From IMG/VR virus record IMGVR_UViG_3300036770_006893, positions 62,001 through 126,000 of that record: a DNA stretch of 64,000 nucleotides. One strand, given 5' to 3'. Shown here one piece after another: positions 26,101-52,716 of this stretch. The notes below the pieces were generated by a model. That model ran no database searches, was not told where the DNA came from, and saw nothing but the letters and a program-made list of their open reading frames with translations. Within the stretch, counting starts at the first letter, position 1, and each line of letters begins with the position of its first letter. The position numbers were made by a program, and so were the translations under genes.

Positions 26101-29100
26101 AGATATACTTAACTATAATCGCAAACAATTTAAGCTTATAAATAAAACTGTTCAAGCAGCTAAAGATAATTTTAAAGATATAGAGCTAGAAGATTCTGGC
26201 GAATTAAAAGACTATTTTGAGCTACAGCAGCAGTTGGGTAATCTATATAATAATTTTTCTATATACGAGGACTTTAATAAGCTGGATTTATTTGCAAATC
26301 CGCTATTATCTAATGCTAAATCACTAACAGTATTGTCTAATACTTCTGTTGCTAGATCAGATCTAAAAAAATATATCGAAAACCAACAAGCCCAGCTCGC
26401 TCAAGGAGTCGCCCCAGACAATAACGATAATCCAATCCTTATTGGTCTTAGAGATCCGCTTCCGCCAGATCTACAAGACGCAACCAACAAGTGGGTTAAA
26501 AAAACTGAATTTGATATTTTTTCTAGAGATGGGACCGGCCCAGTCAAAACTTTCCCATTCTTAATTAATGCAGATGCCAGAGATTTAGGCGAGGGTTTTA
26601 TGAAGAGAGCCGCTGTTGCTCTACAGGCCCAAAAAGATGCTATAGAAACAAGCATGGTAATAGATAATAATAAAATGACGCTTACGCTTGGCGCCGGTAA
26701 GAACATAGAGCTCCCCTATTCTGCAACATACACAAAATATAGTGGTCCTTTGTGGGATTTAAACAATAATACTTTTAGTGATGATAAAAATAAACAGCTC
26801 AAAGATTTATTCCTTCCAGATAAGGGTGCTGAAAATTCTATTTTTTCTAGTTTAGATACTAATGGAAGTAGATTATTTAAAAGGGGTGGTGTTTTTGATC
26901 TAAATAATATTCAACAAAGTATACCAGCTGACAATATCAATAAATTAATAGATTTGGTAAAAAATAATTCTGAACAAAATTTAATAGATAAAGAAATACA
27001 AAATATAAAAAATCAATCATCATTAACATTTAGACATATTGGAGATAATCAGGGATCACTAATTAAACTACAAAGAGCTATTGGTAAAGAAGTTTTTGTA
27101 GGCTATTCTCAATTAGCAAACACACCTGTTGATTTTGGAGCGTTTGTTGCTCAAGGTGTTATAGACTATGCTAAAAATTTAAAACAAGAAGCTGGAATAG
27201 CAGCTGGTCGTGCTCAGGGAGCAGATGATCAAGACCGAGTAGTATCAGATGTTCCGATGGCATTGCAACAACTAACAAAAGGAGCATTGAATGTATTTGG
27301 TAGAAGGCCTATTCCAGGTATAGGTCGTGGATGGCTAGCAAATAACATAAGACCGCTTATTGGATTAATGTCTAGACAGGGTCGCGGCAGAGCACCCGGT
27401 CTTACTAACGATCAAGCTAGAGGAGCATCTGCGTATATTAGAGATGTGATGAATAATGTTGGTGGATATGTTAATCAAATATCCGGAAGAGTATCCAATC
27501 CTGTGCTATACAATAGCTTAAAGGATACTTTAATTCTTATACAAGGTGCCTATAAATCATTTGATGCGCTGGCCAGATCAGATAGTGCAGATTTAGCACA
27601 AATGCTGAAATCTAATCTGGATCCAGAATCTATATTCCGTAGTTTTGGTTCTGGTGCTATGCTTGATAGAATAGCCATGAGCGAACTATCTGGCGACTAT
27701 AAGAATATTCTTGGTCAGCAGCTACGTGGGTCAAAGATAGCAACGGTTGGTGATAATGGCGATATTAAGCTACAAGAAGCGGCCAATCTTGAATTTAGAA
27801 ACTATAAAGACTTAATCAAATTGGCCATCAACCCGTATAATGAGTTTTCTTCTGTAAAAACTAGAAGAGGTATTTTTGGTAAGCTTACGAACGATATTTC
27901 TGGTGCTGTTGATAATAGGGGTATGCCTTATTTTGATCCTAACACACTCAATTTCTTATTAACTTCGCTCAATCAGCTAGATAAATGGTATGGTGGTGTT
28001 GGTCCTTGGCTAGGTCAAGACTATCTCTTTGATAAGACCTTAGACCCGGATCCTGCTACACGATCTCAAAAATTCCTGGCTAGTTTGCAGAAGGCCCAAG
28101 GAATATATGAATTATCTAATGTTGCCTATCAAAATCTTGGTGGGGCTGGTAAGTTTGGTCCAGTTTTACCAAATAAAGAATGGTTTCAAAATCGTATAGA
28201 TGCTGGCAACTTTGCTACCGGCGGTATGGTTTATGCGTCCGGTGGAACACTAGTTAACTATCAGCCACGAGGCACAGATACTGTTCCTGCTATGTTAACT
28301 CCGGGAGAGTTCGTGGTCAACAGATCTGCTACAAGAAAAAACCTGCCACTATTACAGCAAATTAATAGCGGTTACTTAGCAGAAGGCGGTATGGCCGAAA
28401 GTGCTGGTGTTAGTAGATTAAGATGGACTCCAGAAGGACGAACACGAGCTATAGAACAAAAGGACACAATCACCCCAAAACTAAACAATATAAATAAAAA
28501 CGTTCTCAATAATTTTACTAGTATTACATCTATTCAAAAAGATATTAAAAATATTAAAGATAGCATAAATAACAATACGCAATCTTTACAACAAACTATA
28601 AGCCTACTAAATATTAAATTTACTGAATTACAAAACCTATCTCAAGCCTTGGCTCCGTTTGTTTATAGTCAGTTACTGGTGGCTTTAAGAAATTTCTGGA
28701 GTAGTTTAGGAACAGCCATTATAACACAGGGACTCGGTAATGGTGCGCCATGGCCTCCTGCTCCGTTTAGCGATGGAGGAATTGTATATGCTAGCAAAGG
28801 ACAGCTCATTAATTTTCAACCAAAGGGAACCGATACTGTCCCGGCAATGCTTACTCCGGGCGAGTTTGTTGTTAATGCTAAAGCAACTAAAAATAATTTG
28901 GGATTATTACAAAGTATAAATAATGGAGTTGGTGGGTATAATAGGGGTGGAGTGGTTTATTTGGAAGATGGCGGCTTAACTCCTGGAGCAAAACAATCAT
29001 TAATAGACTTACAAAATCAAGGATATAATTTACAAGATATTGTATCTGGTAAAACAAGAATTCCTGGTATTATAGTAGAGACATCTAAAAAACAATATGA

Positions 29101-32100
29101 TCCTATGATGCCAACAAAACCGGCCCCAAACATAGAAACATATAGAGAAAATCCAAAATTATGGAACGGATTTAAAGACTCTAGTGGTTTTTGGTGGAAT
29201 AAAAGAGGAGAATCTGTCATAAGCGCATATGGGACTCCCCCAGTATTGCCAAATTTTCAAGAAAGAATGCAAGCATTTGAGTCTATTGTAAGTGCTTTTG
29301 CCGGGGCGGGCGGAGTAGGAGGTGGTCGCGGAAAACTAGCAGATGTTCGTGGCCTGCCTGCTGGAATGCCAATGCAGAGAAACGCTCCCGGACCATTAGG
29401 AACTAAAGTCGCTATTCCATATCTTATTGGTAGACCAAATCCCAATAATGCACCAAGAGCTAATTCAATGGGTCTCACATTAGACGCGATTAGAGATCCG
29501 CTAACAGGAAACTACTACGTATCAGATACTCCCGCAAGAAATATTACTATTTCTGGACGCCAAGGATTACCAGCGCCAAAAACTAGACAAAGAACAAAAT
29601 CACCTCTAGATTTAGAAAATGGTAAAATACCAGATTCTATTACTAATCCCAAATCCAAAGAATTTATGCATCTTGCGATAAAAGAAATGATTGGATATAC
29701 TGAATTCATGAATCTGGTTAAGCTAAAAGTACAAAGATCAGATAGGACATACTCTAGCTTATTAAAATTTTTAGCCTTAGATATATTTCCAAAAGGAAAT
29801 GCTTATGGAGTTGATTCTCTAGATAAAGCTATTTCATTTTTTAATACTCCAGAAGGTATAGAATTATATAATACAAAAATATCTCCAAAAATAGGCGTTG
29901 TTCCAGAGATAGGTGGATATAACGCATCTATAATTAATCAAAATTCTAAAACAGGTGGCGGAGGCATTACAGGAAGACTATTAAAAGAATTATTTCAACA
30001 AAATATATTTCATATTAGTAAAAGATCAGCAAATGTTCCAGACGATCTTAATTCCAGAATGGCGTCGTTGATTCCCCCAACAGCTGGATTGCTATATGAT
30101 GACAATATAGCAAAACTATTATCTTCCGCTGGCGTTACGCCAAAAGTAGATTCGAATAGAGTTAGTTATGTATTTGATGTCGCTGAAGCAGGGAAAGACT
30201 GGGGGTTACTTACTCCAGATCAAAGGGCCCATCTACAACAATTTGCTCCAAAAGCAACTGGCAGCGAATCATCTAATATGAAAAGAGGTCAGCTTAGGAC
30301 ATCATCCAGAGAAAGATTAGGTGATGGGCCGCCTAGCTTATCGAAATTTGGAACAGCCACTCCTAAAAAATCTTTTCACGGATCAGGATCAGAAATTATT
30401 CAAGTAGACCCAATGAAGCTGAACCAGGGTATGCTTGGTGAGGGTTTTTATGTGGGTTTTGATGCTAACGAAGCACCTATTAATTTTTTAAAGATGAGAT
30501 TAGACAGCTGGTTACTAGCTAACAAGCTAAAACCAGGAAATATTACACCAGAGCAATTAGCGCAATTTAAGGGTGGTATATATCCAGTTGATATATTAGG
30601 AGGCATTGATGACTTTTTGGCTGCTGATCAAATTCTAAAAGACAATCCGGCAGCGTTAGCAAAAATAGAAAATATATACAAAGACTTAGGACTAAGAAAA
30701 GTTTCTCTTGGACCAATAGAATATAAAAATGATCCAACGACAGGAAGAGCAAAAGCAGTAAGAACAGAAGGACCGCTTGATCTACCATCTGCCACAGTTA
30801 TGCAGGTTTACGACAATATTCAAAACCAGCTAGCAGCTAAATATGAAACTGAATTTGCTGGTAAATCCAATATTCCTGATCCAAGATTTGAGGCGCTCAC
30901 AAGATCAGCTACAGATATGAGAAATATATTTGTAAAATATGGCATACCCGGATTTACCGATTTAAATAATGCTCGTAGTCAAGGCTCGATGGCAGCTATA
31001 TTTGATTTGAATAGAATTAAATTAGGTAAGGCATATATTCCTGATAAAATACTCAAAGAAATAATGATGCCCATTGATCAAAATACTTATAAAGATATTG
31101 ATGGCGACTTAGAAATATTAGAATCTGTAAATAAAAAGAAAGGAGGTATAATTTATGCTAGCAAAGGCCAGTTTATAAACTTCCAACCTCGTGGCACCGA
31201 TACTGTTCCCGCAATGTTAACGCCTGGAGAATTCGTAGTTAACCGAACGGCCACACAGAAAAACCTACCTCTGTTAAAAGCTATTAATAGCGGTGTTGAC
31301 GGATATAGCAATGGAGGAGTTGTTTATTTAGCTGCTGGTGGCAGGCCACAGCGTACAACTCGAGATAAAAATAAGCTTGATATTAGAGAAATAGATAATA
31401 GATTCAGGTCGCAAATGACCAGTCGCAATGCTCAACAAATGGCCGAGGCCGCCGCAAACAGAGAAGGCAAGCTATGGGTATTCATGGTTAAGACTAGAGA
31501 TAATAATGGCGCAGAAACAACGGGCTTTTTAACAAAGGATCCTAATAACCCCAATCAGCCGGCACCAAAAAATATTCCGCCACAAACAGAATCTTTACTT
31601 GCGAATAGACTAGATGAAATATTTACTCTAAGAGCAAGAAATGAAAAAGAGGCCATGGATGCCTACAAAGAGATGAATGTAGCCGGACTGTTACCTGAAG
31701 TCAAACCAGCCTCAGCTCAACAAGCACTGAACAAGGCTAGAAAAAAATGGATGCAGCAACCACTATATGCCAAGATTTTTGATGAACTAGCTTATCAAAT
31801 TAATTTAGATCGAAATCAATTTAGCATATTTAATCCTGATTTCTTCAATCGAAATGTTAATGTTGATGAAAATATAAAGCCAATTATGGCTATTGTTGAT
31901 AATATGGATCCCAACAACCCCGCATCTGTTGCTTTGGGCGTTCCAGCAATATTAACTAAATTAAGACCAATAGTTCAAAGAATTAATTATTTGCGACACA
32001 TTATTAGAAACAATGAGCAGGCCCTAACAGCAGTTAAGAGTGCGATAGCCTCAGGCCTAAATATAAACGATCCTGCTAATATGAGAAAAGCTTTCGAAGG

Positions 32101-32965
32101 CAATCCTGCTACAAAAATTAATGAGGAACAACTTAATGGCGCCAAGCCCGAATTGGCTGGTGGTGAACAAGTATTAAATAAGCTTGGAACTAATCCTGTA
32201 CTAGCTAATCTTGGACGAGATCCTAGGTTTAAAGAGATAGTATCCACGTTTGGTTATGGTCCAGGAGTGGCTGTATCCACATTTGAGCGCCGTGTAGAGC
32301 AGATGGCTGCTCCACCAAAACTACTAGCCTCTGGTGGTAGAGTTACCTATGCTAGTAACGGACAGCTTATTAATTTCCAGCCACGGGGTACCGATACTGT
32401 ACCAGCTATGTTAACACCAGGAGAATTTGTGGTTAATCGCGAAGCGGCCAATAAGCACTTGTCTCTATTGCAAGCTATTAATAACAATAATTTTGCAAAT
32501 GATTCTGTTTTAACTTTAAGTCGAGGTGGTTTTATTTCCCCAGCATATTTACGTAATGGTGGATCAGCACCCTCTTTGGCCGGTTTATCTGATATGGTAT
32601 CAAAACTTACTCAGAGCATACAATCAGCAGTAGAAACAGCTATAACCAAAGCTTTTGAAAATTCTGAGCTATTGCGATCTAATTCTAGCGATGGTGTATC
32701 TGATAATGGTGCTGTTGTTGATCAAATAGCGGCGTTTACTAGAAATTTGGGAGATTTGGCGAATCGACTAGAGACGATATCTGTACCACCAGAAATCACT
32801 ATACAAGGACGACAAGACATCAATGTTAACGCTAATGGATTACAGGTACTTTCCAGTCTAGACCCATCTATGAAACAGCTCGCTATGAATATGATCAAAA
32901 CCGCATTTGATAATTTGGCCACAAAAAATCCCGGAACTTTAGATTTTAATGTAGACTATCCATAG
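17162..32965 (+). CDS. Giant tape measure protein (5267 aa), TP901 family, with embedded HAD and ADP-ribosyltransferase-like domains
   Basis: PhageMin_Tail/TP901 core near 17870-18700 (LAQAGLSAKET...LMRQFG...AVAAKFAVEAGDIIAAIQRTG...AETIATGLRTIFTRI); long Ala/Arg/Gln helical tracts; hydrophobic stretch near 22440-22670; follows tube and chaperones. Confidence 0.92.
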   Translation: MAFNLTAEINLRGPSNIRNVVSNIRRQLNSISVDVSPSVRNSDIRSIATTIRSRLAGISIPVNIAASSSSIRAVSRNIRTGIGNVNIPVSVNVSQRSLSAARRDINARLNNIRANVNVVVNPVSVRSAAALNANLTNLNQTLTNVTASATSAATAIRDLSAAMRAAGGGANALTQINTALNVTTNNASSANASIRNMSGEIENFGRQAGLAIRRFAAFTTVTSVFYGLARSVQSGLSAFIEFDRQLVRISQVTGDSLSSIKNLSNSITSLSQLYGVSSEKLAEVAVVLAQAGLSAKETQQSLASLAKTTLAPSFDNINDTVEGSIALMRQFGIQSNQLEQALGSVNAVAAKFAVEAGDIIAAIQRTGGVFAAASKGVSEGTDALNEFISVFTSVRATTRESAETIATGLRTIFTRIQRGGTIEALKDFGISLTDVEGKFVGAYKAVELLSTGLSKLDPRDLRFSQIVEELGGFRQIGKVIPLIQQFATAQDALRVAQTGAGSLSEDAAKGQLALAVQIARVREEFLALIRSVGDTSSFRTLVKLGLDLASSLVQVADAAKELIPLIGAFAAFRGAQSLTRFAAGFAGGIRGTPARGFASGGYVPGSGNRDTVPAMLTPGEFVIRKKAVEKIGVSSLSRLNRNNGGPVPAQYFEDGGQVQRFGIGGVAKKGVNWKNLSKGRGKKGPRGPRARFDLPQPGDADFAKWQREVYAEYDADPSLPRVRVNGIPMPPEIAYVNELIGEEIFRQNFRSRKSKKSGKLKKTPLGLIISAAKMPRGPRAPAGEMEKIMAGYQQSPEFQKEAVGAGSSLFSTLKGPLASFKKGGTFGGVIAPGSENATKIKGALAKLLSQSSGQDATKAKTALDKFDSFIAGSTPEKPGHVSHFTWAMNQIFKKGIATFGRGGRASRRMGVFDFDMTTGITKQKETPSLSGFRDPKLAVPDILGATPTGLVGLMRRYGASQILTARSGGPRGEMRRALGTFFRRSGVMLPQSNIITLGDQVGSLSTAEKKARALYAIVKKYGKVDFFDDDTANIDAAKMVRGVSARKVSVMKNLGGFVQKFMAGKAVKRMPDLPPDIKALITREARLGIGKEDPALQSALLNLVAKRNRSVGTTELASRLAGLIKSNQLTPRLANQMLSTGGLAIPTGPGGKTTIQALSLEALGPKDTTKYTRNIGGRETDILRASPTPDLSARLTRDLVQGTRIGIARFIRTGLTEYAMQSPENRRSLIDRGIKFDSKGRAIPPRSAVDAAMSHGDAGNFLGPLFEKGIIGLGAQAGPSLPGKAAPIDTSRVGDIVASIMRGGAPISAELPTELRAAKAKTRASAGIPNINKRGLVNQILRFFKLPGLKFAQGGLVPGVSSSRAREAILGKQLSGVEMIRAARRAGYDIEELDNGLIRLSRNNKTMHTLSRQEASKLLGSMTTGYNLGGMIQKFARGGSPKDTVPALLTPGEFVINKKAAARLGSSKLHRLNKADKISGFNTGGEVGRVPTFSSGGDVQRFFFGGRASARPGTEANTSNLMIAGNVTTQLREVATALQELGAASSASADILRRGGRISVESANAAYEADILRMRVAGAPMDAVIQAETRLANMRRQAQTQVAAQRQLAGVGGAQLERVDTTAQQNIQRMIQRAQNSGVDLNEAQRARIEDLGYRRAAQAGGLSAAQTAGLSGNDIRQFINSAMGDPRTFEQMNRQFEARRRAELNNQYIAENRFGGDRRRILQQASRDAAEEARIRRQTLNQTRGAAGPGGTRGQRMQQGMFAASFALPMLAQMLAGDPSRATSAGGAAMSAGIQGGANALALGTMLSSLVPPGLPQVFVGVATAAGAVAQGFIDARNATIEFEKNMSAKKVEFAIADTVRLFDKLSKDIKNIDVQNAIGDKLVEAAKAAERSIEIQSNTARAFWINMIDAFASNGREAAQRAQILEKYGTTAYLSTTTIGQSFMGGSGTAQQRAERRRSNFAMEMAPEQAREISRQFSEIADSSNKLLEEKIRSGLNIEQYINTDEFKGLSQAIALSNAAIAEQILNIRASTVLTQAQKTAQEKLIISTYAEQEARKRAAAITRELEIKQAQKVVNQLARSLDRMFGNMEQAINKTNFALEKMSRDLDLVSSSLTGQAKLGERSIQAINVLQNPRAYGSGELNMARGQAAGFFGDSGNIIRGLLTLGDDIEANIMGTINRTLRDTRDDSPGKIAIAIQKSVKEKLAGLALPKDLSDKLAREVSKALEEIRKDGEDQADFTQLEEKLQDLNKIIDSTTKAQDIAIKALETWQNALNSYSSSMNSLVDLQIDYQSRLRTSNDILLDGQASLARSLGKDIGLESIANRRNLRIAQQTGGATAPQDIFRNINRLELLRAQQENASNVAAQRGPSGAKDFVEMQNNLRSTNVALRENFDALKNLAENSDLASAALNKIQEAQQRQQGKVSFIEKLVTSTPEELSGLNRAFVRLQNNINGQVNTINNSVGAQRAYIEAIRSGSNAFEAMKAAQDAFANERRETLSALNDILPFLGGGNKANQIRANTLESMLAESGVGVSPMFQDILNSLRDPELDPETQKAIALYEQANILQVKANDFLAQINLKLGEQTAEAAAKAIATALSSVVLTFKNAEQADINRGLIPQNRAKGGIIYASKGVFAPKGTDTVPAMLTPGEFVVNKNATAKNLPLLKSINSQTLSSGGKVKYYARGGLVSSYLSTNAQSRDDFQQTKDKFLDLSENEQLFQDVSKTSLFRLPSTYIRKPQAGLQTPSKSSPARERYDDRPNKYRLKELYSNSGEILPGYVTSKIDLGPYYYSVPSMATVANRELGKYLEPVNLIPAGIKTTILGLDSTDLDISSKKYSKKDFAEYKKKLETLNIERFNWINNPASFALRALEGVTQEYPSNIDPTALNNRFFDPNSKQKLSSIYPSDAGLRTSSVPFKYAKILSDNRSDYFGITTGSIGTEPPNGDFSSGPTLSKTIDTMWAKVWNIDKNKALSPQRAKDILNYNRKQFKLINKTVQAAKDNFKDIELEDSGELKDYFELQQQLGNLYNNFSIYEDFNKLDLFANPLLSNAKSLTVLSNTSVARSDLKKYIENQQAQLAQGVAPDNNDNPILIGLRDPLPPDLQDATNKWVKKTEFDIFSRDGTGPVKTFPFLINADARDLGEGFMKRAAVALQAQKDAIETSMVIDNNKMTLTLGAGKNIELPYSATYTKYSGPLWDLNNNTFSDDKNKQLKDLFLPDKGAENSIFSSLDTNGSRLFKRGGVFDLNNIQQSIPADNINKLIDLVKNNSEQNLIDKEIQNIKNQSSLTFRHIGDNQGSLIKLQRAIGKEVFVGYSQLANTPVDFGAFVAQGVIDYAKNLKQEAGIAAGRAQGADDQDRVVSDVPMALQQLTKGALNVFGRRPIPGIGRGWLANNIRPLIGLMSRQGRGRAPGLTNDQARGASAYIRDVMNNVGGYVNQISGRVSNPVLYNSLKDTLILIQGAYKSFDALARSDSADLAQMLKSNLDPESIFRSFGSGAMLDRIAMSELSGDYKNILGQQLRGSKIATVGDNGDIKLQEAANLEFRNYKDLIKLAINPYNEFSSVKTRRGIFGKLTNDISGAVDNRGMPYFDPNTLNFLLTSLNQLDKWYGGVGPWLGQDYLFDKTLDPDPATRSQKFLASLQKAQGIYELSNVAYQNLGGAGKFGPVLPNKEWFQNRIDAGNFATGGMVYASGGTLVNYQPRGTDTVPAMLTPGEFVVNRSATRKNLPLLQQINSGYLAEGGMAESAGVSRLRWTPEGRTRAIEQKDTITPKLNNINKNVLNNFTSITSIQKDIKNIKDSINNNTQSLQQTISLLNIKFTELQNLSQALAPFVYSQLLVALRNFWSSLGTAIITQGLGNGAPWPPAPFSDGGIVYASKGQLINFQPKGTDTVPAMLTPGEFVVNAKATKNNLGLLQSINNGVGGYNRGGVVYLEDGGLTPGAKQSLIDLQNQGYNLQDIVSGKTRIPGIIVETSKKQYDPMMPTKPAPNIETYRENPKLWNGFKDSSGFWWNKRGESVISAYGTPPVLPNFQERMQAFESIVSAFAGAGGVGGGRGKLADVRGLPAGMPMQRNAPGPLGTKVAIPYLIGRPNPNNAPRANSMGLTLDAIRDPLTGNYYVSDTPARNITISGRQGLPAPKTRQRTKSPLDLENGKIPDSITNPKSKEFMHLAIKEMIGYTEFMNLVKLKVQRSDRTYSSLLKFLALDIFPKGNAYGVDSLDKAISFFNTPEGIELYNTKISPKIGVVPEIGGYNASIINQNSKTGGGGITGRLLKELFQQNIFHISKRSANVPDDLNSRMASLIPPTAGLLYDDNIAKLLSSAGVTPKVDSNRVSYVFDVAEAGKDWGLLTPDQRAHLQQFAPKATGSESSNMKRGQLRTSSRERLGDGPPSLSKFGTATPKKSFHGSGSEIIQVDPMKLNQGMLGEGFYVGFDANEAPINFLKMRLDSWLLANKLKPGNITPEQLAQFKGGIYPVDILGGIDDFLAADQILKDNPAALAKIENIYKDLGLRKVSLGPIEYKNDPTTGRAKAVRTEGPLDLPSATVMQVYDNIQNQLAAKYETEFAGKSNIPDPRFEALTRSATDMRNIFVKYGIPGFTDLNNARSQGSMAAIFDLNRIKLGKAYIPDKILKEIMMPIDQNTYKDIDGDLEILESVNKKKGGIIYASKGQFINFQPRGTDTVPAMLTPGEFVVNRTATQKNLPLLKAINSGVDGYSNGGVVYLAAGGRPQRTTRDKNKLDIREIDNRFRSQMTSRNAQQMAEAAANREGKLWVFMVKTRDNNGAETTGFLTKDPNNPNQPAPKNIPPQTESLLANRLDEIFTLRARNEKEAMDAYKEMNVAGLLPEVKPASAQQALNKARKKWMQQPLYAKIFDELAYQINLDRNQFSIFNPDFFNRNVNVDENIKPIMAIVDNMDPNNPASVALGVPAILTKLRPIVQRINYLRHIIRNNEQALTAVKSAIASGLNINDPANMRKAFEGNPATKINEEQLNGAKPELAGGEQVLNKLGTNPVLANLGRDPRFKEIVSTFGYGPGVAVSTFERRVEQMAAPPKLLASGGRVTYASNGQLINFQPRGTDTVPAMLTPGEFVVNREAANKHLSLLQAINNNNFANDSVLTLSRGGFISPAYLRNGGSAPSLAGLSDMVSKLTQSIQSAVETAITKAFENSELLRSNSSDGVSDNGAVVDQIAAFTRNLGDLANRLETISVPPEITIQGRQDINVNANGLQVLSSLDPSMKQLAMNMIKTAFDNLATKNPGTLDFNVDYP
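18989..32431 (+). repeat. Seven dispersed copies of the peptide motif DTVPA(M/L)LTPGEFV inside the TMP
   Basis: Asp codons begin at 18989, 21488, 25085, 28277, 28832, 31199 and 32393 (aa 610, 1443, 2642, 3706, 3891, 4680, 5078). Each copy is flanked by (F/Y)xxGG half-motifs. Confidence 0.95.
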
Positions 32966-32974
32966 GATAATTTT

Positions 32975-35900
32975 ATGAATCAACCAATACAAATTTATAA
33001 TAACATAGGCTGTGAGTTTATTCTAGACAACAATAATTTTATTATCGGCACAGCTTTAAAAGGCTATAATACTCTCGATAATAATCATGTGGGTAGTTAT
33101 ATTCCCTATTTAGTAAGAAATATATCTAGAGATCAGATTATAGCATGGGAGATAGGGGTTGGGTTTGTAGAGAAGGCTGATAGTAAGATCATAGTTTCTA
33201 GACATAATGTAATACAGTCATATGGGTCGATTGAGTCCCCCGGACAAAAAAACTTCTATTTATTTGCTAATGCCGATGGCTATAATAGTGGATTCAACAA
33301 CGTTGTTGTTGCAACAAGCGATTTTTTTGCTGGGACATCCAGAGCCTGCTACTTAATAGAAAAAAACGGTATCACTAAAGTCAAACTAATTGATCCAGCC
33401 AAAGCTAAATCTGTAGAACTTCAATTTAAGATTATATCTAGCGATGAAAATAGTGTAGTAGAGATATCTGATGACCACAGTTTTCGCTATGTGTTAAAAT
33501 ATAATCAAAAATATCTATCTATAGTCTCCGATGGAAGTAAGTGGAGGATATTACTTAGTCCATCATCTAATAGTAGCAATATGCTCTCAGCACTATCTGC
33601 CTCAAGCGATTTTTCTATACTTGGTGATCCAGCCGGAGACGATGGGTCATTTCAGTACAAGGTCGGAACTAGTTTTTCTGGCGGTCCCGTATATTTAGGT
33701 TCTGATGATAAGATTCTTTTTGGTCCTGATAGCATAGAATCTAACGCTAAAAGCATTATACCAACTTCTGGTAATTATGACACCATCATTAATAATACTA
33801 AAAATAAATCGGACTTTATTGTTCATGGAAGTGGTGTGCCAGATGGTTATCTACCAAAAAATCTTATTTTCACCTATGATGGTAAGCTTGGATTAAATCT
33901 CCCTTCTGGGGCTAAGCCACAAACTGCTCTTCATATAATCAACAATTCTTGCAGAGAAAGCATCAGGATCGAAAATCTCAGCGACTGTCCAACGCATATA
34001 CCCAACGTCACACTATATCACAAGCCATCTGGTGTTTCTGATGATACTATTATAAGTAAAGTTGTTTTCGCTAGTCGCGACTCCAATAATAACAAAAAGG
34101 ATTATGCTGTACTACAGACAACCGCTCAAAAAGTTGATCCGTCGGATGCTACTGGAAAGTTTGACTTGATTTTGGCGTCCGGATATCAGAGCGTAAACAC
34201 ACTTTCTTCCGATCCGTTGTCTACTGTTTTAGGCTATTTATCTGATTACTATTTGGTTGCTAACAGCACATCTGGTATTCGAATGATAGCACCCAGATCA
34301 AATAATCAAATTTTTGTATCAGATAGTTTAGCTGGTATGTCAGGTGGTATTGTATCAGTTTCTGGAGGTAGTGCTGTAAATATCACCTCCACCGGAACCA
34401 TAAATCTTAATCAAGCCGTTATTATTAACGGTATTAATATTGGTATGCCTTATATTGAACAAAATAAAGTATTAGCAGTTAATTCTCAAGGTTTACTGGC
34501 ACCAGCTACTAATTTCACTATTAATGGCGTAGGATCAAATAAACTATTGACTACTGACGCTAGTGGTGTTGTTACTGGTGCTTATAGTGACGATTCATTT
34601 TTGCTCACAGATGGCGACATAACATGGAGTAAATTTCCTCCTAGACTAGGCAATGTTTGTTTGAGACAAATTACTCCCATAGAAGATTTTCCCGTTAACG
34701 AATTTGCTGTAGGAGATCAGCTAGCAATAGTAACAGGAGTTGCACCAAATCAAGGCACCATATATCGCAATATAACTTCTATAGACAGAACAGATGATCT
34801 TATTAGCTATATCTTATTAGATCAAAACGTTACAACTATTGATTCTACCATATTTTGTTATTCGATCACCAAAGGCGGCGTGTTAACTATTCAGGTTAGA
34901 ACAGAAGACGGCACAGAATCCCAGGCTACTGCCACCATATTAAGCACAAGACCAGACACAAACACAGTGTTCAATACTAAACAAAAAAATATTAATTTCA
35001 CCGTATATGGTATTGAGGACACCCCAGCTCTACATATTATGGCCAAAGCAACTACGGTGCCTGTAAATTCTGGAGTTTATAACAAATTTGCTACTATCGA
35101 TGAGCCATTTGCTAGCATACCGAATCCACTAGGAGTAGGAATAGGTACTTCTCACAACAGTGTTAATTTTGCCAATATCCCTTCTGATTTATGGCTAAAC
35201 AAAGTTACATCTGTTGGTACTAATGGTAAGCCAAGTTTCTACGGCACATATGATCAAAACGGAAATGTTTACGAATGGGTAGAAGACACAAACCCAGCAT
35301 CTATATCGATAAACCAGAATGTTTGCGGTGGCTCATGGAAAACTTTAACTGCTGAGGGTTTGAGGAGTGTAATTTCTACACCAGCTAATTTAGCCTTAGA
35401 AGATGTTGGATTTAGAATATGTTCTAGATATGGTTATTCTGATGATGCGATATCGCCAACCATCGGACTTTCTTTTGTTGCTGTTTCTAATTTAGATAAT
35501 ATAGAAGACAACTCTTTTATATATACAGAATCATACTCTAATCGAGACGAATTAAATCTTCCTCCCGTACCATCATCTATTATTAATTTGGGCAAGGTTC
35601 AGCATCCATATCGCATATCGACATACGAGATTACCAACGCTCAATATATTAAATTTTTAAACTCGGTTAATAAAACTGCTATTTTCGATCTGTATAACGA
35701 TAATATGTCATCCGCTATAGTTGGTGGAATACTGAGGTCTGGTTCTGATGGCGACTATGTTTATACAACCAAAACCAACATGGGCGACAAGCCAGTTGTG
35801 TATGTAAATTACTTAAGCGCTATCAGGTTTATCAATTGGTTGCATAACGGTGCTCCCGATAGTGAAAATTTTGAATTAGAAGATATCGAGGATGGTGCGT

Positions 35901-38602
35901 ATACTATAGTGTCTAATCCTTATGGGACCACAGTATACAAAAACCGAGACCAAAAATACTGGTTGCCAAATTTGAATGAGTGGCATAAAGCTGCTTATTT
36001 TACTCCTGTCGTTAGCGACGCAGAGGCAGATGCCTCCGCAATAATGATTAGGAGAGAGCTGCCTGTTGAAATTTCTAGCGGTAACTTAGCATCATTTAAT
36101 GTTGGTGGAGGTATTTATGCTGATGAGCTAGTAATTGGAACCAATAATGATTCAGTCGGCTCTTTACTATCCACACTAGATGAAAATGGGTCTGGTATTA
36201 CTAGCATTAATTATGGTTATAATAATTATATGTTAAATATAGGACCTTCAGGTGCTATTGCATTAGATTCAGAGACTGAAGATTGGGATGGCGAACACTC
36301 AACATTTATATCTCCCTATCCTACAGAGGGGATACAACTAGCTACCAGCGGAACAATTAAACTTATTAGTCCCGAGTGTGTAAAAATCAGCGGATTATGT
36401 AGCGACCACTTATTTACTAAAAATATAACTTACATAGACCCAGACACCGGTGATCCTATAGAAGGAGGTCAGTTTCCAGGACCAAATGGTGGCTTTATCT
36501 ATAAAGACGTTACAACTGATTTGCCACTAGCATCTAATTTACTTTCTTATGTTGAGGCAGACAATGTGACGGGTATTGTGCTAGCTGGCTCAGAACCAAA
36601 TAATGCTATATATGCAAATAATCTGGGTATTTTATCTAGTTATGAGTTTGTAAGATTTGGCGCTACTGTTGAAGGACTAGATGGAGAAGTGGTCGCTATA
36701 GGTAATGTTGAGGCAACACCTGGCGAAACTGATGGAGAAGGCAATGAGCAGCCTAGTATTCCACTAGTGGTCGAATCCATTAGAATCGGCCCGCCGTTAC
36801 CAGCTTTTTCTGGAAGCATTTTGACCCATAATGGTACGGATCTTGCTGTTTGGCAACCAGCGAATTATATGCGAGCAGATGGTATGAGTTGGAATAGATA
36901 CGAGCGTCGTGCAGTAGAAATACTTTCTGGTAATGTCTTACGATTCTCTAGTCTGTCTCAGTCAGATGGTGGTACTGGTGCTGTAACTAGAGAGGCAATA
37001 GAGCAAGAATTTGGGCTAAATGATACTATTGCTATTTATAATCAGCAAAGAGAAGTAGAATATGTAAAAATAGCAGCTATAGTACCAGTCGGACAAAATG
37101 ACGAAGATATTAGCATTTTTAGTAACGAGGAAGCACTAGAGATAATAGTCTGCCCCAGCTTGCCCGATGCCTTCATAGATAATAGCTTGGTGCCAAATTC
37201 TGATCCTTCTGTATACATAGGTTACGCTTTCTCTGTTGACAAGGGTGCTCATCTCGATATGTCAATAGAGCCCAGCGCCACCAGCAGGTTTTCCTGTGAA
37301 ACAGATGCTGATTTAGAAAATTCGCCGTATGGCTTTAAGCCAAGCACAATAAATACAATAAGTATTCGTCCTGGCACAGATACTTCTTTTAATAAGCTTG
37401 GCGAAGATATCGATTTTGCTATTTATAATTATGTGCAAACGCTTAATGATAGATATGAAGAGGAGCTATTTGCATCAAACAGTCGAGGCAATCCATCTGG
37501 GCTTATTCCAGCACTATATATAGATTCTTTTATTGATTCATCTTTTATTGGCACCATAGGCAGTGGCGTATTTGCTGACAACAAGAGATTATTTGCTTCT
37601 GGCATTATCCCAGACCCTAGTGCAAAAATCACAATAAATACAAAGCAACCTCATATTGTAACATCATTATCTGGTGTGAAAACAGGTCTTATTTATCCAA
37701 ATAGCGTTTTACCTACCGGTAAACTAGTGTCTTCGGAACAAGACATAGCCACATATGCAGACTTGACCATTAACGGATATACATATAGTAGTGGAATTAT
37801 ATCAACAGAAATTGTATTAAAAAACACAGAAAATAGAGAGTATATACCCAATGCTCCTTTGACTATTAATTCGTTGGGTCAAATAGTGTCTATAGTCCCT
37901 CCCCCACAACCCACTATTTCAGATCCTCCAACTAATGTTTCTGGTTTTGCCGCAAATAGTAGTGTTAGACTTCAATGGAACCAGCCAGAAAACACCGGCA
38001 ACACCCCGATTATAGACTATGTGATAGAGTACTCAGAGAATGGAGAAATATGGGAGGTATTTGAACACGACCCATCGGTTGATACCTCTATATTAGTCAC
38101 CGGGTTACAAAATGCCATAGATTATAAGTTTAGAATATATACTGTTAATGAAATTGGAACCAGCGTCCCATCAGAAGCAAGCGATGCTATAAAACCAACA
38201 GCAAATGCTCCTACGCAGCCAACCAATCTTACAATTATAAACAGATCAGAATCACAAATTATTGTGGATTGGGCGATACCTCAGTACCAAGGTCCCACGG
38301 GTCAATCTGTAGTAAATTATATTGTAGAATATGCAAGTTCTGTAAGCCCTCCTGGTCCTTTAACATGGACGACTTGGCCAGAGTTTATAGGTACCACAAC
38401 TAATGTGACACTAACCAACTTATCTTCTGGTCCTACTTACTATATAAGAGTGAGGGCACAAAATTCCATCACTTCAGGAGCTTATGCTTCTATTTTTTCG
38501 GTAGGATCAGATAACGATATTAATCAGCCTGTTGCGCCAGAGCCCGAGCCCGAAGAGGATTGGGATTTTGGCGAAATAGCATTTACAGGAGTATGCTTAT
38601 GA
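32975..38602 (+). CDS. Large tail fibre/tail-tip protein with circularly permuted FGE-sulfatase (SUMF1-like) domain and two C-terminal FN3 domains
   Basis: N-terminal fibre-anchor-like segment (...IAWEIGVG); FGE motifs at about 35158-36001; FN3 x2 at about 37920-38490 (LQWNQP...DYVIEY...YKFRIYTVNEIGTS; VDWAIP...NYIVEY...YYIRVRAQN). Confidence 0.75.
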   Translation: MNQPIQIYNNIGCEFILDNNNFIIGTALKGYNTLDNNHVGSYIPYLVRNISRDQIIAWEIGVGFVEKADSKIIVSRHNVIQSYGSIESPGQKNFYLFANADGYNSGFNNVVVATSDFFAGTSRACYLIEKNGITKVKLIDPAKAKSVELQFKIISSDENSVVEISDDHSFRYVLKYNQKYLSIVSDGSKWRILLSPSSNSSNMLSALSASSDFSILGDPAGDDGSFQYKVGTSFSGGPVYLGSDDKILFGPDSIESNAKSIIPTSGNYDTIINNTKNKSDFIVHGSGVPDGYLPKNLIFTYDGKLGLNLPSGAKPQTALHIINNSCRESIRIENLSDCPTHIPNVTLYHKPSGVSDDTIISKVVFASRDSNNNKKDYAVLQTTAQKVDPSDATGKFDLILASGYQSVNTLSSDPLSTVLGYLSDYYLVANSTSGIRMIAPRSNNQIFVSDSLAGMSGGIVSVSGGSAVNITSTGTINLNQAVIINGINIGMPYIEQNKVLAVNSQGLLAPATNFTINGVGSNKLLTTDASGVVTGAYSDDSFLLTDGDITWSKFPPRLGNVCLRQITPIEDFPVNEFAVGDQLAIVTGVAPNQGTIYRNITSIDRTDDLISYILLDQNVTTIDSTIFCYSITKGGVLTIQVRTEDGTESQATATILSTRPDTNTVFNTKQKNINFTVYGIEDTPALHIMAKATTVPVNSGVYNKFATIDEPFASIPNPLGVGIGTSHNSVNFANIPSDLWLNKVTSVGTNGKPSFYGTYDQNGNVYEWVEDTNPASISINQNVCGGSWKTLTAEGLRSVISTPANLALEDVGFRICSRYGYSDDAISPTIGLSFVAVSNLDNIEDNSFIYTESYSNRDELNLPPVPSSIINLGKVQHPYRISTYEITNAQYIKFLNSVNKTAIFDLYNDNMSSAIVGGILRSGSDGDYVYTTKTNMGDKPVVYVNYLSAIRFINWLHNGAPDSENFELEDIEDGAYTIVSNPYGTTVYKNRDQKYWLPNLNEWHKAAYFTPVVSDAEADASAIMIRRELPVEISSGNLASFNVGGGIYADELVIGTNNDSVGSLLSTLDENGSGITSINYGYNNYMLNIGPSGAIALDSETEDWDGEHSTFISPYPTEGIQLATSGTIKLISPECVKISGLCSDHLFTKNITYIDPDTGDPIEGGQFPGPNGGFIYKDVTTDLPLASNLLSYVEADNVTGIVLAGSEPNNAIYANNLGILSSYEFVRFGATVEGLDGEVVAIGNVEATPGETDGEGNEQPSIPLVVESIRIGPPLPAFSGSILTHNGTDLAVWQPANYMRADGMSWNRYERRAVEILSGNVLRFSSLSQSDGGTGAVTREAIEQEFGLNDTIAIYNQQREVEYVKIAAIVPVGQNDEDISIFSNEEALEIIVCPSLPDAFIDNSLVPNSDPSVYIGYAFSVDKGAHLDMSIEPSATSRFSCETDADLENSPYGFKPSTINTISIRPGTDTSFNKLGEDIDFAIYNYVQTLNDRYEEELFASNSRGNPSGLIPALYIDSFIDSSFIGTIGSGVFADNKRLFASGIIPDPSAKITINTKQPHIVTSLSGVKTGLIYPNSVLPTGKLVSSEQDIATYADLTINGYTYSSGIISTEIVLKNTENREYIPNAPLTINSLGQIVSIVPPPQPTISDPPTNVSGFAANSSVRLQWNQPENTGNTPIIDYVIEYSENGEIWEVFEHDPSVDTSILVTGLQNAIDYKFRIYTVNEIGTSVPSEASDAIKPTANAPTQPTNLTIINRSESQIIVDWAIPQYQGPTGQSVVNYIVEYASSVSPPGPLTWTTWPEFIGTTTNVTLTNLSSGPTYYIRVRAQNSITSGAYASIFSVGSDNDINQPVAPEPEPEEDWDFGEIAFTGVCL

Positions 38603-52400: not shown

Positions 52401-52716
52401 ACTAGTATTTGTCAAAGATCGATCTGGATATACTGCTCCTAGAGCAGCTAAGTTATTATGTAGATATGATAAAGATACGGGCTTTTATGAACCTGTATCT
52501 AAACAGTCTTATTTTGTATTTGGTACAATAACTGGTGGAAATAATGCGGTTGTTGATTTATCTTATATACAGGGTAAGCACAGAGGTAGTAATTTTCCAA
52601 CGCTAAATATAGTTTTTGATAATACTAGATTCAAAATGAATATATCTGCAAATAGCAGAGGAATGTTTTATTATGAAAATGGCACATGGGTTTTGGTAGC
52701 AAAAAATGATAACTAA
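46483..52716 (+). CDS. Large tail-tip/hub-like structural protein (2077 aa)
   Basis: The N-terminus (LGASVLSYSVNIGWGGQPSVLNVEL...FAGIVQSWEK...YTVTIEGP) resembles hub/Tal-type openings; CPCC...CPCC metal-binding pair near 51340-51430. Confidence 0.55.
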   Translation: MSNTCPGAQNNSDQVIQTLFLGASVLSYSVNIGWGGQPSVLNVELINDEQPAACEADNTSLFPNSSFGPDHYYTCVGDACYIDERGRTYSRNNRPPPLKKMRPGKLYFYFENGEIKSQYWKDGDPGFFGDYTYINKTGAYTKDLASSYDIIGSPVVFVLDSFVFAGIVQSWEKNPITRTYTVTIEGPDSLLENSWIILRDYGGSIFSSTGSSLGAPLPYIGPLAQNNGKIADGNIHNVFNVYGFLESFGVDYYGGSNATEDGIPYSSIIDALSVLTSIEGNQAAAVNILNNLNKRAFSPFGRILSKPIVDLDLSVATMGNFGVVPSQVDDLNINRSFYTLDLSELPILDNSFRMSGDVVSIMDFIRSLTAVSGKDFYTQLLPVSINGILHNIIKVKVIDRNIRPADNQISLTINSLKTAGYKVNVNSLGKEKSDSSSSKIMYVGAKQERLYQAKNYRLGFRQTAYVYDPALNKFVDFDFLNDLGKVRYPSPYSTRNTAISSSVNGTFATNVFNQIENIRLRIERVVPESIDNIWTDTEVGGSDQVKHWNYSPSIRANLVFNRLDKQNQRYIPIYMDTISPFFGYVMDDQANVNTGNASNNFRKIRPVWFDNLTGQLAVVIKTSELPPITLGSSSLFRTASLQTILPNGSVLITETEIRAAMSGFDSYFTYCDAKAVANKPQLYLMLLSAYYHANPAFANNRGGGVGWARGTNGSIIPFLPPENIFAEANVANNLGLPGNPQSAPTSIGWSALIDDNFIKDLMTICQFIANIGNSFYGKKYMVRIGGINSYRDTTAYLNGSTPYIINASTYLPNSTEQIAVFQGGGKIYFSSEPCDSAWEEPGNIIDDSFVVGGAAWYNLINEQGKIPPLLGYNASDNYDSEAMRLCLISKIMPGGVSRTTNANIAQSALSSLDPSASMPRTLGYNYSNFTYLGSFANQSTALKTDTSYGNMVRFFLTAGTGSCSKDKFIYPSINVSSLNKNDFVIVNTNSSRINAFGDTISPGNRNTILPPILQPNLQLAPVTNPQGMAKKLFVKAQADEMGFMDPLNLRDPRIILTSPGVELNPVSLIFSVDPTRTVLCNAAVEDLLVYLKAVPGPIQDKSFINHLLRQIRGYDAFSNVYLNPQGNALVGALFGGSWPAMAYNNNVTTQHAQIAPKAAHPYFAAIPMRLNQSCYGPWTNYPYLIRSEIFSDGITNQLASYNSELDYLNSQLNSPQLSNLDRKEIARSIKRIGQLINRANTARNNVSSGAAIENLVGGVKVQIEPDFVPWNYGGMAFLDKVVIGFINSNTDFRQILETAQIQINSAPIFGIGGEFMYTDPDSITGSIRFNNEAYQVNVIPLQYEDVKANPSSTPINIPIVGNPIYLPPIGGTTYTKINVTYNVITLLSQNRTGIAPIITNMSTRFDTSGFNTTYTFRSYARKLGLYSKQFSDRLKNSVQQSLQLNKTLFSLDSGIRNSKNILVQNRINERNNDRSSYSIESLRNSKLFGTSPTEVFIGSAQGYLPSVNIIENRISMAFANRTPNGMPNGVTTSPLSINGQDPGDIAVNPKDVGGLSKKYRHRSWVGMFQHWETKTELQEGYEEKAAMSLDGLLSPVSFYPTPNNSTYAMLPYPKINGRSMCPCCRGTHSVTQQVGIGNQLSNLTAPCPCCSRGMPSIVFAQNVPADIGSGVSGVNAMNLQPVVVPFPVWRNAHAQPPSSGERQRHSIRVVGRNWLAPFDARNGMSLDIDKNKEVLIDPLNNKIVENGAGVNKDFHVADIGMFHANGGFYLNNHRFFALRGPLMLHGWGYDISGYPVPNEADEPDPQTMISNLPKRFRLTVSGTNDYTQDGAVFATQAPYGLGDIIGKGWKFSDGSWTRTPSKYFHVNWGERPDLWPVGPIDLRWDANRRVWTAGGEGGCPEQLPPFIIADTDDPALLSEFTKLPKSECPYKLIYITLEEDMIKEPDYDETYPVRGFIDDIQYSKEPLPNKARRLVFVKDRSGYTAPRAAKLLCRYDKDTGFYEPVSKQSYFVFGTITGGNNAVVDLSYIQGKHRGSNFPTLNIVFDNTRFKMNISANSRGMFYYENGTWVLVAKNDN

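What the first reader, a model, noticed from the sequence alone, without database searches (positions are those of the whole stretch)
35158..36001. Circularly permuted FGE/sulfatase-modifying-factor domain in a tail protein
Seen: the normally C-terminal half comes first (NFAN...VTSVG...SFYGTYDQNGNVYEWVED...GGSW...LRS...VGFRI, 35158-35420). The normally N-terminal half follows (FVAV..LDN...LGKVQHPYRISTYEITNAQYIKFLNSV...KPVVYVNYLSAIRFINWLHNG...EDGAYT...YWLPNLNEWHKAAYF, 35465-36001). Established: canonical FGE-fold domains run EITxxQY...PV..V....A..F..W...RLP.E.EW.KAA and then G..D..GNV.EW...RGGSW...GFR. The WLHNG..EDGAY subtype is one I associate with planctomycete secreted proteins, and this fold is also used as a ligand-binding C-type-lectin-like module. 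Inference: a permuted receptor-binding module, possibly host-derived, which would hint at a Planctomycetota/PVC host.
Basis: partly seen in the sequence, partly recalled or inferred. Interest (0 to 1): 0.7.

Follow-up and report, generated by a model that had tools for sequence, protein, structure and literature searches.

The report
Circularly permuted FGE-type lectin domain in phages
A giant tail protein of an uncultured 224-kb phage carries a lectin-like domain of the sulfatase-modifying-factor (FGE) fold whose two halves are in swapped order; the swap is real, is predicted to fold as one domain, is shared by hundreds of phage proteins, and was not seen in any bacterial genome examined.

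Summary
In the 1875-aa ORF at 32975-38602 (+), aa ~737-815 match the C-terminal part of Pfam PF03781 (profile 158-252). Aa 875-1007 match the N-terminal part (profile 34-122).

It is a true circular permutant, not two relics.
- AlphaFold2 gives one compact domain for aa 710-1011 (pLDDT 86.9, pTM 0.84).
- The halves, cut apart, re-dock in silico (ipSAE 0.92; best control 0.01).
- Each half superposes on the matching part of solved FGE-fold structures.
- No cryptic partner halves exist in the flanks.

The swapped order is common in phages. In the 80 best IMG/VR loci, 89 of the 92 ORFs with a match are built only of C-then-N units, and one 329-aa ORF is a stand-alone unit. All 80 best cellular loci keep the canonical order; 64 of them are Planctomycetota, Verrucomicrobiota or Lentisphaerota. 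No permuted unit appeared in 802 sampled genomes of those first two phyla.

The catalytic cysteines are absent, there is no DGR, and the gene directly follows a 5267-aa tape-measure gene.

The most likely role is a non-catalytic glycan- or ligand-binding module on the tail; this is inferred, not shown.

The PVC-host idea is weak: the phage has 36% GC, against a median of 62% at the cellular homologue loci.

I rate it a new variant of a known kind, of moderate interest.

The parts
32975..38602 (+). ORF of 1875 aa: giant tail protein that carries the permuted domain. It lies immediately downstream of the tape-measure gene.
   Evidence: Orthologues of 1150-1970 aa all have the unit at aa ~700-1050.
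35102..36007 (+). Permuted FGE-type (C-type-lectin-like) domain, aa 710-1011: the confidently modelled compact core.
   Evidence: AF2 model m8acb3b559ab0: pLDDT 86.9, pTM 0.84, blocks 11-310 at about 81-98. Split halves re-dock with ipSAE 0.92 against a best control of 0.01.
35150..35425 (+). First half, aa 726-817. It equals the C-terminal part of the canonical domain (N-S-x-N-F, VGTNG, YGTYDQNGNVYEW, GGSW, variable loop, GFRI); Pfam profile 158-252.
   Evidence: It superposes on the C-terminal parts of pFGE 1y4j (180-294), CalU17, EgtB-IV, OvsA and Mtd 1yu0 (269-380).
35426..35473 (+). Junction that joins the old C-terminus (GFR strand) to the old N-terminus (FVAV strand). It is 7-23 aa between the matched halves in viral relatives.
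35474..36007 (+). Second half, aa 834-1011. It equals the N-terminal part of the canonical domain (FVAV..D..N, YRISTYEITNAQY..FLN, KPVVYV, NWLHNG, EDGAYT, LPNLNEWHKAAYF); Pfam profile 34-122. It contains a query-specific insertion at about aa 850-869.
   Evidence: It superposes on the N-terminal parts of TvpA 2y3c (53-214, Z 5.5), CarF 5aoh (2-163, Z 5.4), PvdO and ToxD.
36008..36112 (+). Tail of the unit, aa 1012-1046. It corresponds to the first part of the canonical N-to-C connector. It is conserved in the family (P at unit position 331, G at 346) but modelled at low confidence here.
37922..38482 (+). Two fibronectin type III domains near the C-terminus (aa 1650-1736 and 1751-1836).
   Evidence: PF00041, E 4e-22; PF16656; phrog_6977, minor tail protein.
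17162..32965 (+). Upstream neighbour: tape-measure protein of 5267 aa. It sets the tail-module context.
   Evidence: PF10145 PhageMin_Tail, E 1.5e-22. The same gene order occurs in a related phage contig, L008.

Best explanation
Aa ~710-1046 of this tail protein form one autonomous domain of the FGE / sulfatase-modifying-factor type of the C-type-lectin-like fold, and its sequence is circularly permuted. The segment that ends a canonical domain (NSANY ... YGTYDQxGNVxEW ... GGSW ... GFR) comes first. A short linker bridges the old C- and N-termini. The segment that begins a canonical domain (FVxV ... YEVTNxxY ... NWLHNG ... EWYKAAYY ... YWxY) follows. The new termini lie in what is the N-to-C connector loop of canonical relatives, just upstream of the NSANY motif. 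(Shown: the order, the predicted single fold, the distribution.) The most economical origin is permutation by duplication. Canonical relatives often occur as head-to-tail arrays (N-C-N-C), and loss of the outer halves leaves a C-N unit. The permuted units are compatible with a single origin, after which the unit multiplied inside phage structural proteins as 1-3 copies per protein. (Inferred.) The domain lacks the FGE copper-binding cysteine pair and any accompanying catalytic domain, so it is most likely a non-catalytic binding module. Its probable ligand is a host surface glycan or envelope component, presented on a tail-tip or fibre protein. The hypervariable loop between GGSW and GFR is the same segment that DGRs diversify in TvpA and Mtd, and it is the likely contact surface. 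(Inferred, untested.)
For: Order and significance. Single compact fold: AF2 pLDDT 86.9 and pTM 0.84 for a 361-aa stretch, with aa 710-1011 at high confidence. Separated halves re-associate in silico: ipSAE 0.92 against a best control of 0.01. That mark was reached by 58 of 80 solved complexes and by 2 of 110 mismatched pairs. The three runs agree in at least 93% of contacts, and partner pLDDT is at least 87. The GFRIC strand pairs with the YRISTYEIT strand. Structural matches split exactly at the junction: model 120-313 aligns to the N-terminal parts, and model 7-120 to the C-terminal parts, of FGE-fold structures. No cryptic partner halves appear even with hmmsearch --max at E<=1000. Which pair forms the unit: in permuted-class proteins the C-to-N gap is tight (median 22 aa, maximum 67) and the N-to-C gap is loose (40-791). 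Canonical-class proteins show the reverse. In the 80 best viral loci, 78 ORFs have a lone C-N unit, 8 have CNCN and 2 have CNCNCN. Some units start at ORF residue 5-15, and a 329-aa ORF (L137/L138) is nothing but one unit. Cellular relatives are canonical: 80 of 80 loci, and no permuted unit in 401 Planctomycetota plus 401 Verrucomicrobiota genomes. Single origin is not rejected: the tree constrained to hold all 40 permuted units together has lnL 89 units higher than the free quick tree, p-AU 0.95. Non-catalytic: no conserved Cys after GGSW in the 70-unit alignment. Not a DGR target: no reverse transcriptase and no template-like repeat. Binding role: the GGSW-to-GFR segment (unit positions 90-112) is among the most variable and indel-rich parts of the domain. 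Bacterial relatives are fused to beta-helix, discoidin, FG-GAP and glucuronyl-esterase modules. Tail context.
Against: All structural evidence is predicted. Foldseek found no significant PDB match. VIA-align Z scores are only 5.4-5.5, below the tool's stated typical best Z of 7-8 for models with no clear match, so fold membership rests on sequence profiles plus the pattern of split matches. I could not superpose coordinates non-sequentially, so identity of the 3D arrangement with the canonical fold is inferred from the strand pairing, not measured. On quick and FastTree trees the permuted/canonical label needs 5-7 changes, deep nodes are weak, and I relabelled two rows (L058, P0029) as canonical after inspecting their architecture. 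Recurrent permutation therefore cannot be excluded. For the function: the domain is the most conserved part of the protein among orthologues (63-69% against 44-54% elsewhere in the closest one), and it sits internally at a fixed position. That pattern fits a conserved ligand or a virion-internal partner better than a fast-evolving receptor-binding tip.
Confidence: 0.8

Rival explanations
1. The two matches are relics of a decayed tandem array. One canonical domain lost its N-half and the next lost its C-half, so they are non-folding or independently folding fragments, not one domain.
For: Canonical relatives do occur as N-C-N-C arrays whose C1-N2 junction is colinear with the query. The top AFDB match spans both halves, but at rmsd 24.7.
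Against: There are no cryptic halves in the flanks. The halves are the most conserved part of the protein. One compact model has pTM 0.84, and re-docking gives 0.92 against 0.01. Seventy-eight lone C-N units occur in viral ORFs, some filling the whole ORF.
Confidence: 0.03
2. The domain is a real permutant, but it is formed by 3D domain swapping between chains of a trimeric fibre: the C-half of one chain pairs with the N-half of a neighbour.
For: Tail fibres are usually trimers (general knowledge). The split halves associate strongly as separate chains, which is equally compatible with association in trans.
Against: The C-to-N linker is short and tight, 7-23 aa. The monomer model is confident on its own. 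Stand-alone 329-aa ORFs exist.
Confidence: 0.05
3. The permuted domain is not a host-receptor binder. It is a conserved structural or assembly module, for example a docking site for other fibres or for baseplate proteins.
For: It is the most conserved segment among orthologues and sits at a fixed internal position at aa ~700-1030, while the C-terminal parts vary between 1150-aa and 1900-aa forms.
Against: The same unit recurs 1-3 times in many unrelated-looking phage proteins, including at N-termini and as a stand-alone ORF, and in three proteins of this genome. That is more typical of adhesion modules. The loop equivalent to the DGR-diversified region is hypervariable. Bacterial relatives sit in secreted carbohydrate-active architectures.
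Confidence: 0.25
4. The domain is an enzyme: an FGE/EgtB-like oxidase, or another activity acting on the host envelope, possibly linked to the neighbouring sulfotransferase.
For: PF03781 includes enzymes (FGE, EgtB, OvoA). A sulfotransferase gene lies in the same structural module at 7195-7995.
Against: There is no conserved Cys pair after GGSW, no conserved His or Cys in the 70-unit alignment, and no DinB-like partner domain. The closest solved relatives by profile are non-catalytic or binding proteins: pFGE, TvpA, PorK.
Confidence: 0.05

Closest known systems
Canonical FGE-sulfatase / 'FGS' domain (Pfam PF03781), specifically the WLHNG...TEDGAY subfamily of secreted, often PEP-CTERM-anchored proteins of Planctomycetota, Verrucomicrobiota, Lentisphaerota and Myxococcota
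   Same: Clear sequence homology: 35-46% identity over each half, with the motifs YEVTNxQY, NWLHNG, EDGAY, EWYKAAYY, NSANY, YGTFDQGGNVxEW, GGSW and GFR. The predicted sub-structures are the same. It also occurs in multiple copies per protein.
   Different: The sequence order of the two halves is swapped. The termini lie in the former N-to-C connector. It was found only in phage or viral contigs among the data examined. Composition differs: 36% GC against a median of about 62% at the cellular loci.
DGR variable proteins with the FGE-type C-type-lectin fold (Treponema TvpA, PDB 2Y3C) and the phage BPP-1 receptor-binding protein Mtd (PDB 1YU0)
   Same: TvpA is the best structural match (Z 5.5) and is also hit by the sequence profile. 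These are non-catalytic ligand-binding uses of the fold, and Mtd sits on phage tail fibres. The segment between GGSW and GFR, which DGRs diversify, is also the hypervariable part here.
   Different: There is no reverse transcriptase and no template repeat in this genome. The order is permuted, so the variable segment lies in the first third of the domain instead of at the C-terminus of the protein.
Human FGE (SUMF1) and pFGE (SUMF2), PDB 1Y1E and 1Y4J
   Same: Same Pfam family. The C-half aligns to pFGE 196-267 by profile (E 3e-11) and to 180-294 by structure.
   Different: The catalytic Cys pair is absent (like pFGE, unlike FGE), and the order is permuted.
Natural circular permutants of other lectin and binding domains (for example concanavalin A versus favin; swaposin) and the permutation-by-duplication model. 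This comparison rests on my own knowledge and was not tested here.
   Same: Same kind of evolutionary event. Tandem canonical arrays that could serve as intermediates are abundant among relatives, and one viral protein carries a permuted and a canonical unit side by side (L152).
   Different: A different fold. I found no report of a permuted FGE or C-type-lectin-like domain in the searchable literature.

Membership tests
PF03781 FGE-sulfatase (sulfatase-modifying factor enzyme 1-like domain) | Significant match to the family profile above the gathering score | tested here: met
   44.3-51 bits against a cut-off of 23.3, E 2e-11 to 2e-13.
PF03781 FGE-sulfatase | Colinear match to the profile (N-terminal part before C-terminal part) | tested here: not met
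   Profile 158-252 precedes profile 34-122. Swapped HSPs against a single-domain relative.
PF03781 FGE-sulfatase | FGE-type variant of the C-type-lectin-like fold | tested here: inconclusive
   Each half superposes on the matching part of solved FGE-fold structures (Z 3.6-5.5), and the halves pack confidently. Z values are modest, Foldseek gave nothing significant, and no non-sequential superposition could be run.
Catalytic formylglycine-generating enzymes (FGE/SUMF1) | Two conserved copper-binding cysteines shortly after the GGS(W/Y) motif | tested here: not met
   The query reads GGSWKTLTAEGLRS, with no Cys. No conserved Cys occurs in that segment across the 70 units.
DGR variable proteins (TvpA/Mtd type) | A reverse transcriptase and a template repeat nearly identical to the variable region | tested here: not met
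   No PF00078 match in the 224-kb genome. blastn of the unit finds only weak paralogue similarity, 73-76% over 74-82 nt.
Phage tail / tail-fibre protein | Location in the tail morphogenesis module and similarity to tail proteins | tested here: met
   It directly follows the PF10145 tape-measure ORF, and the same order occurs in a related phage. phrog_6977 'minor tail protein' hits the fn3 part. Weak tail-fibre-like fold matches for aa 1-709.
Receptor-binding protein (host adhesin) | Binds a host surface molecule and determines adsorption | not testable with these tools
   There is only indirect support: fold precedent, a variable loop, multiple copies, and the architectures of bacterial relatives.

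The most novel reading that the evidence does not exclude
The permuted unit is a phage-restricted lectin domain of single origin. It was made once, by duplication and truncation of a PVC-type secreted FGE-like protein, and it now serves as the conserved host-glycan recognition module of a large clade of uncultured low-GC phages with 5000-aa tape measures. Moving the termini into the former connector loop is what allowed the domain to be threaded as a bead into long fibre proteins. The family could then serve as a marker for this phage group and as a lead to its host, for example a low-GC subsurface lineage such as Auribacterota, whose genome G005 holds 36 canonical paralogues.
Probability: 0.25. 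Interest if true: 0.7.

Novelty: new variant of a known kind. Interest (0 to 1): 0.55.

Why it matters
The FGE-type C-type-lectin fold is one of the most adaptable ligand-binding scaffolds in microbes: it serves in DGR targets, the phage Mtd protein, gliding and secretion lipoproteins, and immune sensors. A natural, widespread circular permutant shows that the scaffold tolerates re-wiring of its chain. It also explains why profile-based annotation sees only weak, split 'FGE-sulfatase' hits in these phage proteins. It gives a defined domain (about 300 aa, with stand-alone versions available) for structural and binding studies in a large group of uncultured phages with giant tail proteins. The sharp split between permuted units in viral contigs and canonical units in cellular genomes is a clean case for studying permutation by duplication. 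A comparative survey of 224 jumbo phages reported finding no domains of this family in them (PMC7824862), so its presence here, in three proteins of one 224-kb genome, adds to that picture.

Tried and rejected
- **Foldseek against PDB** with the domain model gave no significant match; the best FGE-related row was 1y4j at E 0.9. I rejected it as uninformative for this irregular, permuted fold and used VIA-align instead.
- **AFDB and ESM Atlas fold searches** align only one half, with TM about 0.4-0.46. That is expected for sequential aligners. They found no permuted cluster.
- **tblastn of the whole protein against GenBank phages** found no match.
- **NCBIfam** gave nothing useful. PHROGs hit only the fn3 part, plus a 'kinase' family that matches the C-half.
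- **DGR hypothesis** rejected: no reverse transcriptase and no template repeat.
- **Duplicated NSANY motif.** A blastp extension suggested that the motif recurs in the query's tail. The family alignment does not conserve it there, because the query has a private 4-aa insertion, so I dropped this as evidence.
- **Strict monophyly of permuted units** on free trees was not obtained: 5-7 label changes and weak deep nodes. Only the AU test could be used.
- **Prophage-borne permuted units** in 802 Planctomycetota and Verrucomicrobiota genomes, sought to tie the phage to a host: none found. The one strong hit, L172, is a canonical tandem. Only 5 candidates per genome were scored.
- **N-terminal 709 aa.** The structure has pTM 0.28 and only weak fibre-like matches, so no firm assignment to a known tail-tip family was possible. 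The language-model Atlas search gave only viral hypothetical proteins.
- **Literature.** Five full-text searches found no description of a permuted FGE or C-type-lectin domain.
Full report
**1. The observation**

The finding lies in one ORF of 1875 aa at 32975-38602 on the + strand. Pfam finds PF03781 (FGE-sulfatase) in two stretches, and two fn3 domains near the C-terminus. I scanned the halves separately. Aa ~737-814 match profile positions 158-252, the end of the family model. Aa 875-1007 match positions 34-122, its beginning. The order 'C-terminal half, then N-terminal half' is therefore real, and it sits at the stated coordinates.

**2. One domain or two relics?**

A full HMMER scan of 1.84 billion representative proteins gave 5671 relatives. 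I mapped the two halves on the best 150 of them. They fall into two classes.

| Class | Proteins | Order | N-to-C gap | C-to-N gap |
|---|---|---|---|---|
| Canonical | 64 | N-C, often N-C-N-C | tight: median 28 aa, max 90 | variable: 10-2213 aa |
| Permuted | 55, query included | C-N, up to three units | variable: 40-791 aa | tight: median 22 aa, max 67 |

- Many permuted proteins start with the C-half at residue ~20-35 and end ~30-50 aa after the N-half. That leaves no room for partner halves.
- In the query itself, an exhaustive hmmsearch (--max, E up to 1000) finds no further half anywhere in the protein.

I aligned 70 permuted units (A1) and ran AlphaFold2 on aa 700-1060.
- The model has mean pLDDT 86.9 and pTM 0.84. 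Aa 710-1011 are at high confidence; the last ~50 residues are poor.
- I then cut the model at the junction and gave the two pieces as separate chains. They re-docked with ipSAE 0.92 (median of three runs); the best of three controls scored 0.01. That mark was reached by 58 of 80 solved complexes and by 2 of 110 mismatched pairs. The runs agree in at least 93% of contacts, and partner pLDDT is at least 87.
- The tightest contacts pair the GFRIC strand, which is the old C-terminal strand, with the YRISTYEIT strand near the old N-terminus. In C-type-lectin-like folds the N- and C-terminal strands lie next to each other (established knowledge). This is what makes a short linker across the old termini possible.

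Structure searches behaved as expected for a permutant.
- Foldseek found nothing significant in the PDB.
- VIA-align gave two disjoint sets of matches. Model 120-313 aligns to the N-terminal parts of TvpA (53-214, Z 5.5), CarF (2-163, Z 5.4), PvdO and ToxD. Model 7-120 aligns to the C-terminal parts of pFGE (180-294), CalU17, EgtB-IV, OvsA and Mtd (269-380).
- AFDB and ESM Atlas matches cover only one half, at TM about 0.4-0.46. They are bacterial PF03781 proteins, many with PEP-CTERM.
- The profile of A1 hits PDB sequences in swapped order.

The Z values are modest, and I could not run a non-sequential superposition. The identity of the 3D arrangement with the canonical fold is therefore a strong inference, not a measurement.

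**3. Where the chain was cut**

I compared the unit with a single-domain Verrucomicrobia protein made of a signal peptide, one domain and a PEP-CTERM anchor. The old C-terminus (...GFRxAS) is joined to the old N-terminal strand (FVxVxDxxN...). The new N-terminus lies just upstream of the NSANY motif. The new C-terminus follows the EWYKAAYY...YWxY...P segment. The cut is therefore in the loop that connects the two halves in canonical proteins. An apparent second NSANY-like motif in the query's tail is not conserved in the family, and I discarded it.

**4. Distribution**

- **Viral contigs.** The IMG/VR scan found 311 stretches. In the 80 best loci, 92 ORFs carry a match: 78 have a lone C-N unit, 8 have C-N-C-N and 2 have three units, so 88 are built only of complete C-N units. 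A further pair of ORFs (L130) holds one half each, which looks like one unit split by a frame break. One ORF (L171) has a partial N-half before two units. One protein (L152) has a permuted unit next to a canonical one. One 329-aa ORF (L137/L138) is essentially a single permuted unit.
- **This genome.** The same 224-kb genome holds two more proteins with permuted units, outside the window.
- **Cellular genomes.** In 185,579 species genomes the 80 best loci are all canonical. They comprise 37 Planctomycetota, 25 Verrucomicrobiota, 2 Lentisphaerota, about 8 Myxococcota or 'deltaproteobacteria', 2 Auribacterota and 2 Pseudomonadota.
- **Targeted search.** 401 Planctomycetota and 401 Verrucomicrobiota genomes gave no permuted unit; the single strong hit is a canonical tandem.

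The swapped order is thus common in phages and was not seen in cells.

**5. Origin**

Tandem canonical arrays are abundant, so permutation by duplication and loss of the outer halves is the simplest route (inference).

I built trees of the concatenated halves. The first had 271 rows (FastTree). A subsample thinned at 50% identity had 86 rows (IQ-TREE quick). On these trees the permuted/canonical label needs 5-7 changes, with weak deep branches. Two of those changes were my own mislabels of truncated canonical arrays (L058, P0029), which I corrected from their architecture. I also dropped one duplicate row, leaving 85.

The tree constrained to hold all 40 permuted units on one side of a branch has a likelihood 89 log units higher than the free quick-search tree, with p-AU 0.95. 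One origin is compatible with the data but is not proven.

**6. Function**

- **Not catalytic.** The catalytic cysteine pair of FGE is absent, and no Cys or His is conserved across the 70 units.
- **Not a DGR target.** The genome has no reverse transcriptase and no template-like repeat.
- **Tail context.** The gene directly follows a 5267-aa ORF with the tape-measure domain PF10145, as in a related phage. Aa 1-709 are beta-rich with weak tail-fibre-like matches.
- **Variable loop.** Within the family, the stretch between GGSW and GFR is among the most variable and indel-rich. It is the segment that DGRs diversify in TvpA and Mtd.
- **Bacterial relatives.** They are fused to beta-helix, discoidin, FG-GAP and glucuronyl-esterase modules.

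Together these favour a non-catalytic glycan- or ligand-binding module displayed on the tail.

Against a classic variable receptor-binding tip, the domain is the most conserved part of the protein among orthologues and sits at a fixed internal position. A conserved ligand, or a role in virion assembly, remains possible.

**7. Host inference**

As a host clue it is weak.
- The phage has 35.8% GC and the related viral loci a median of 35%. The cellular loci have a median of 61.6%.
- Low-GC exceptions exist. Auribacterota loci have 39-43% GC, and one such genome carries 36 paralogues.
- The phage comes from subsurface metagenomes.

That is a lead, not evidence.

**8. Known or new**

Five full-text searches found no description of a permuted FGE or C-type-lectin-like domain. 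Two comparative papers that treat this domain do not mention one. One of them reports finding none of these domains in the 224 jumbo phages it surveyed (PMC7824862; PMC8195603).

I rate it a new variant of a known kind. The fold and its use as a binding module on phage tails are known. The permuted, apparently phage-restricted form is not described in the library I could search.

Noticed in passing
window 17162-32965 (+): The tape-measure ORF is 5267 aa (PF10145 at aa 265-470). A related phage has one of 4982 aa. By the usual ruler relation of about 0.15 nm per residue (my own knowledge), this would imply a tail of roughly 0.8 micrometres, which is exceptionally long.
   Followed up: partly
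window 7195-7995 (+): A 266-aa sulfotransferase (PF13469, E 1e-14; PF00685) is encoded inside the tail-fibre gene block, an unusual companion for structural genes. Any link to the FGE-like domains is speculative.
   Followed up: no
G000:C1:162004-167640 (-) and 169355-172015 (-), outside the window: Two more proteins of the same phage (1878 aa and 886 aa) carry permuted C-N units. The 1878-aa protein has one at its very N-terminus and a second that is interrupted by an insertion.
   Followed up: partly
L152, ORF 2-4348 (+): A viral protein has the order C-N-N-C: one permuted unit immediately followed by one canonical unit. In the quick tree the canonical unit groups with two other canonical units close to the base of the main permuted cluster, but that node is weakly supported.
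   Followed up: partly
L137 ORF 5818-6804 and L138 ORF 3585-4571: A 329-aa open frame is essentially one stand-alone permuted unit (C at 43-135, N at 145-290). It is a natural minimal construct for structural work.
   Followed up: no
window 46483-52716 and 52706-60202 (+): Two further giant ORFs (2077 and 2498 aa) downstream in the same module have no Pfam match at all. Several ORFs between them and the finding have no PHROG match either.
   Followed up: no
G000:C1:212600-212952 (-) and the tRNA genes at 19.5-33.5 kb and 206-214 kb, outside the window: The phage genome encodes a tmRNA (tag GNTQLALAA) and nine tRNAs. These could help host assignment.
   Followed up: no
G005 (genome of L044/L047, Candidatus Auribacterota MAG): This genome has 36 matches to the domain profile, mostly ~330-aa single-domain canonical proteins. 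It has unusually low GC for this protein family (loci at 39-43%), closer to the phage's 36%.
   Followed up: no
window 10109-11167 (+): A 352-aa ORF has an N-terminal match to a tail-fibre-assembly PHROG (phrog_3304 and phrog_1084) and a C-terminal proprotein-convertase P-domain (PF01483).
   Followed up: no
L009-L011 (context of P0138): Another metagenomic protein with permuted units is fused to RCC1/WD40_RLD repeats. It sits among 1200-1900-aa RCC1-repeat proteins, which look like a different kind of phage fibre module.
   Followed up: no
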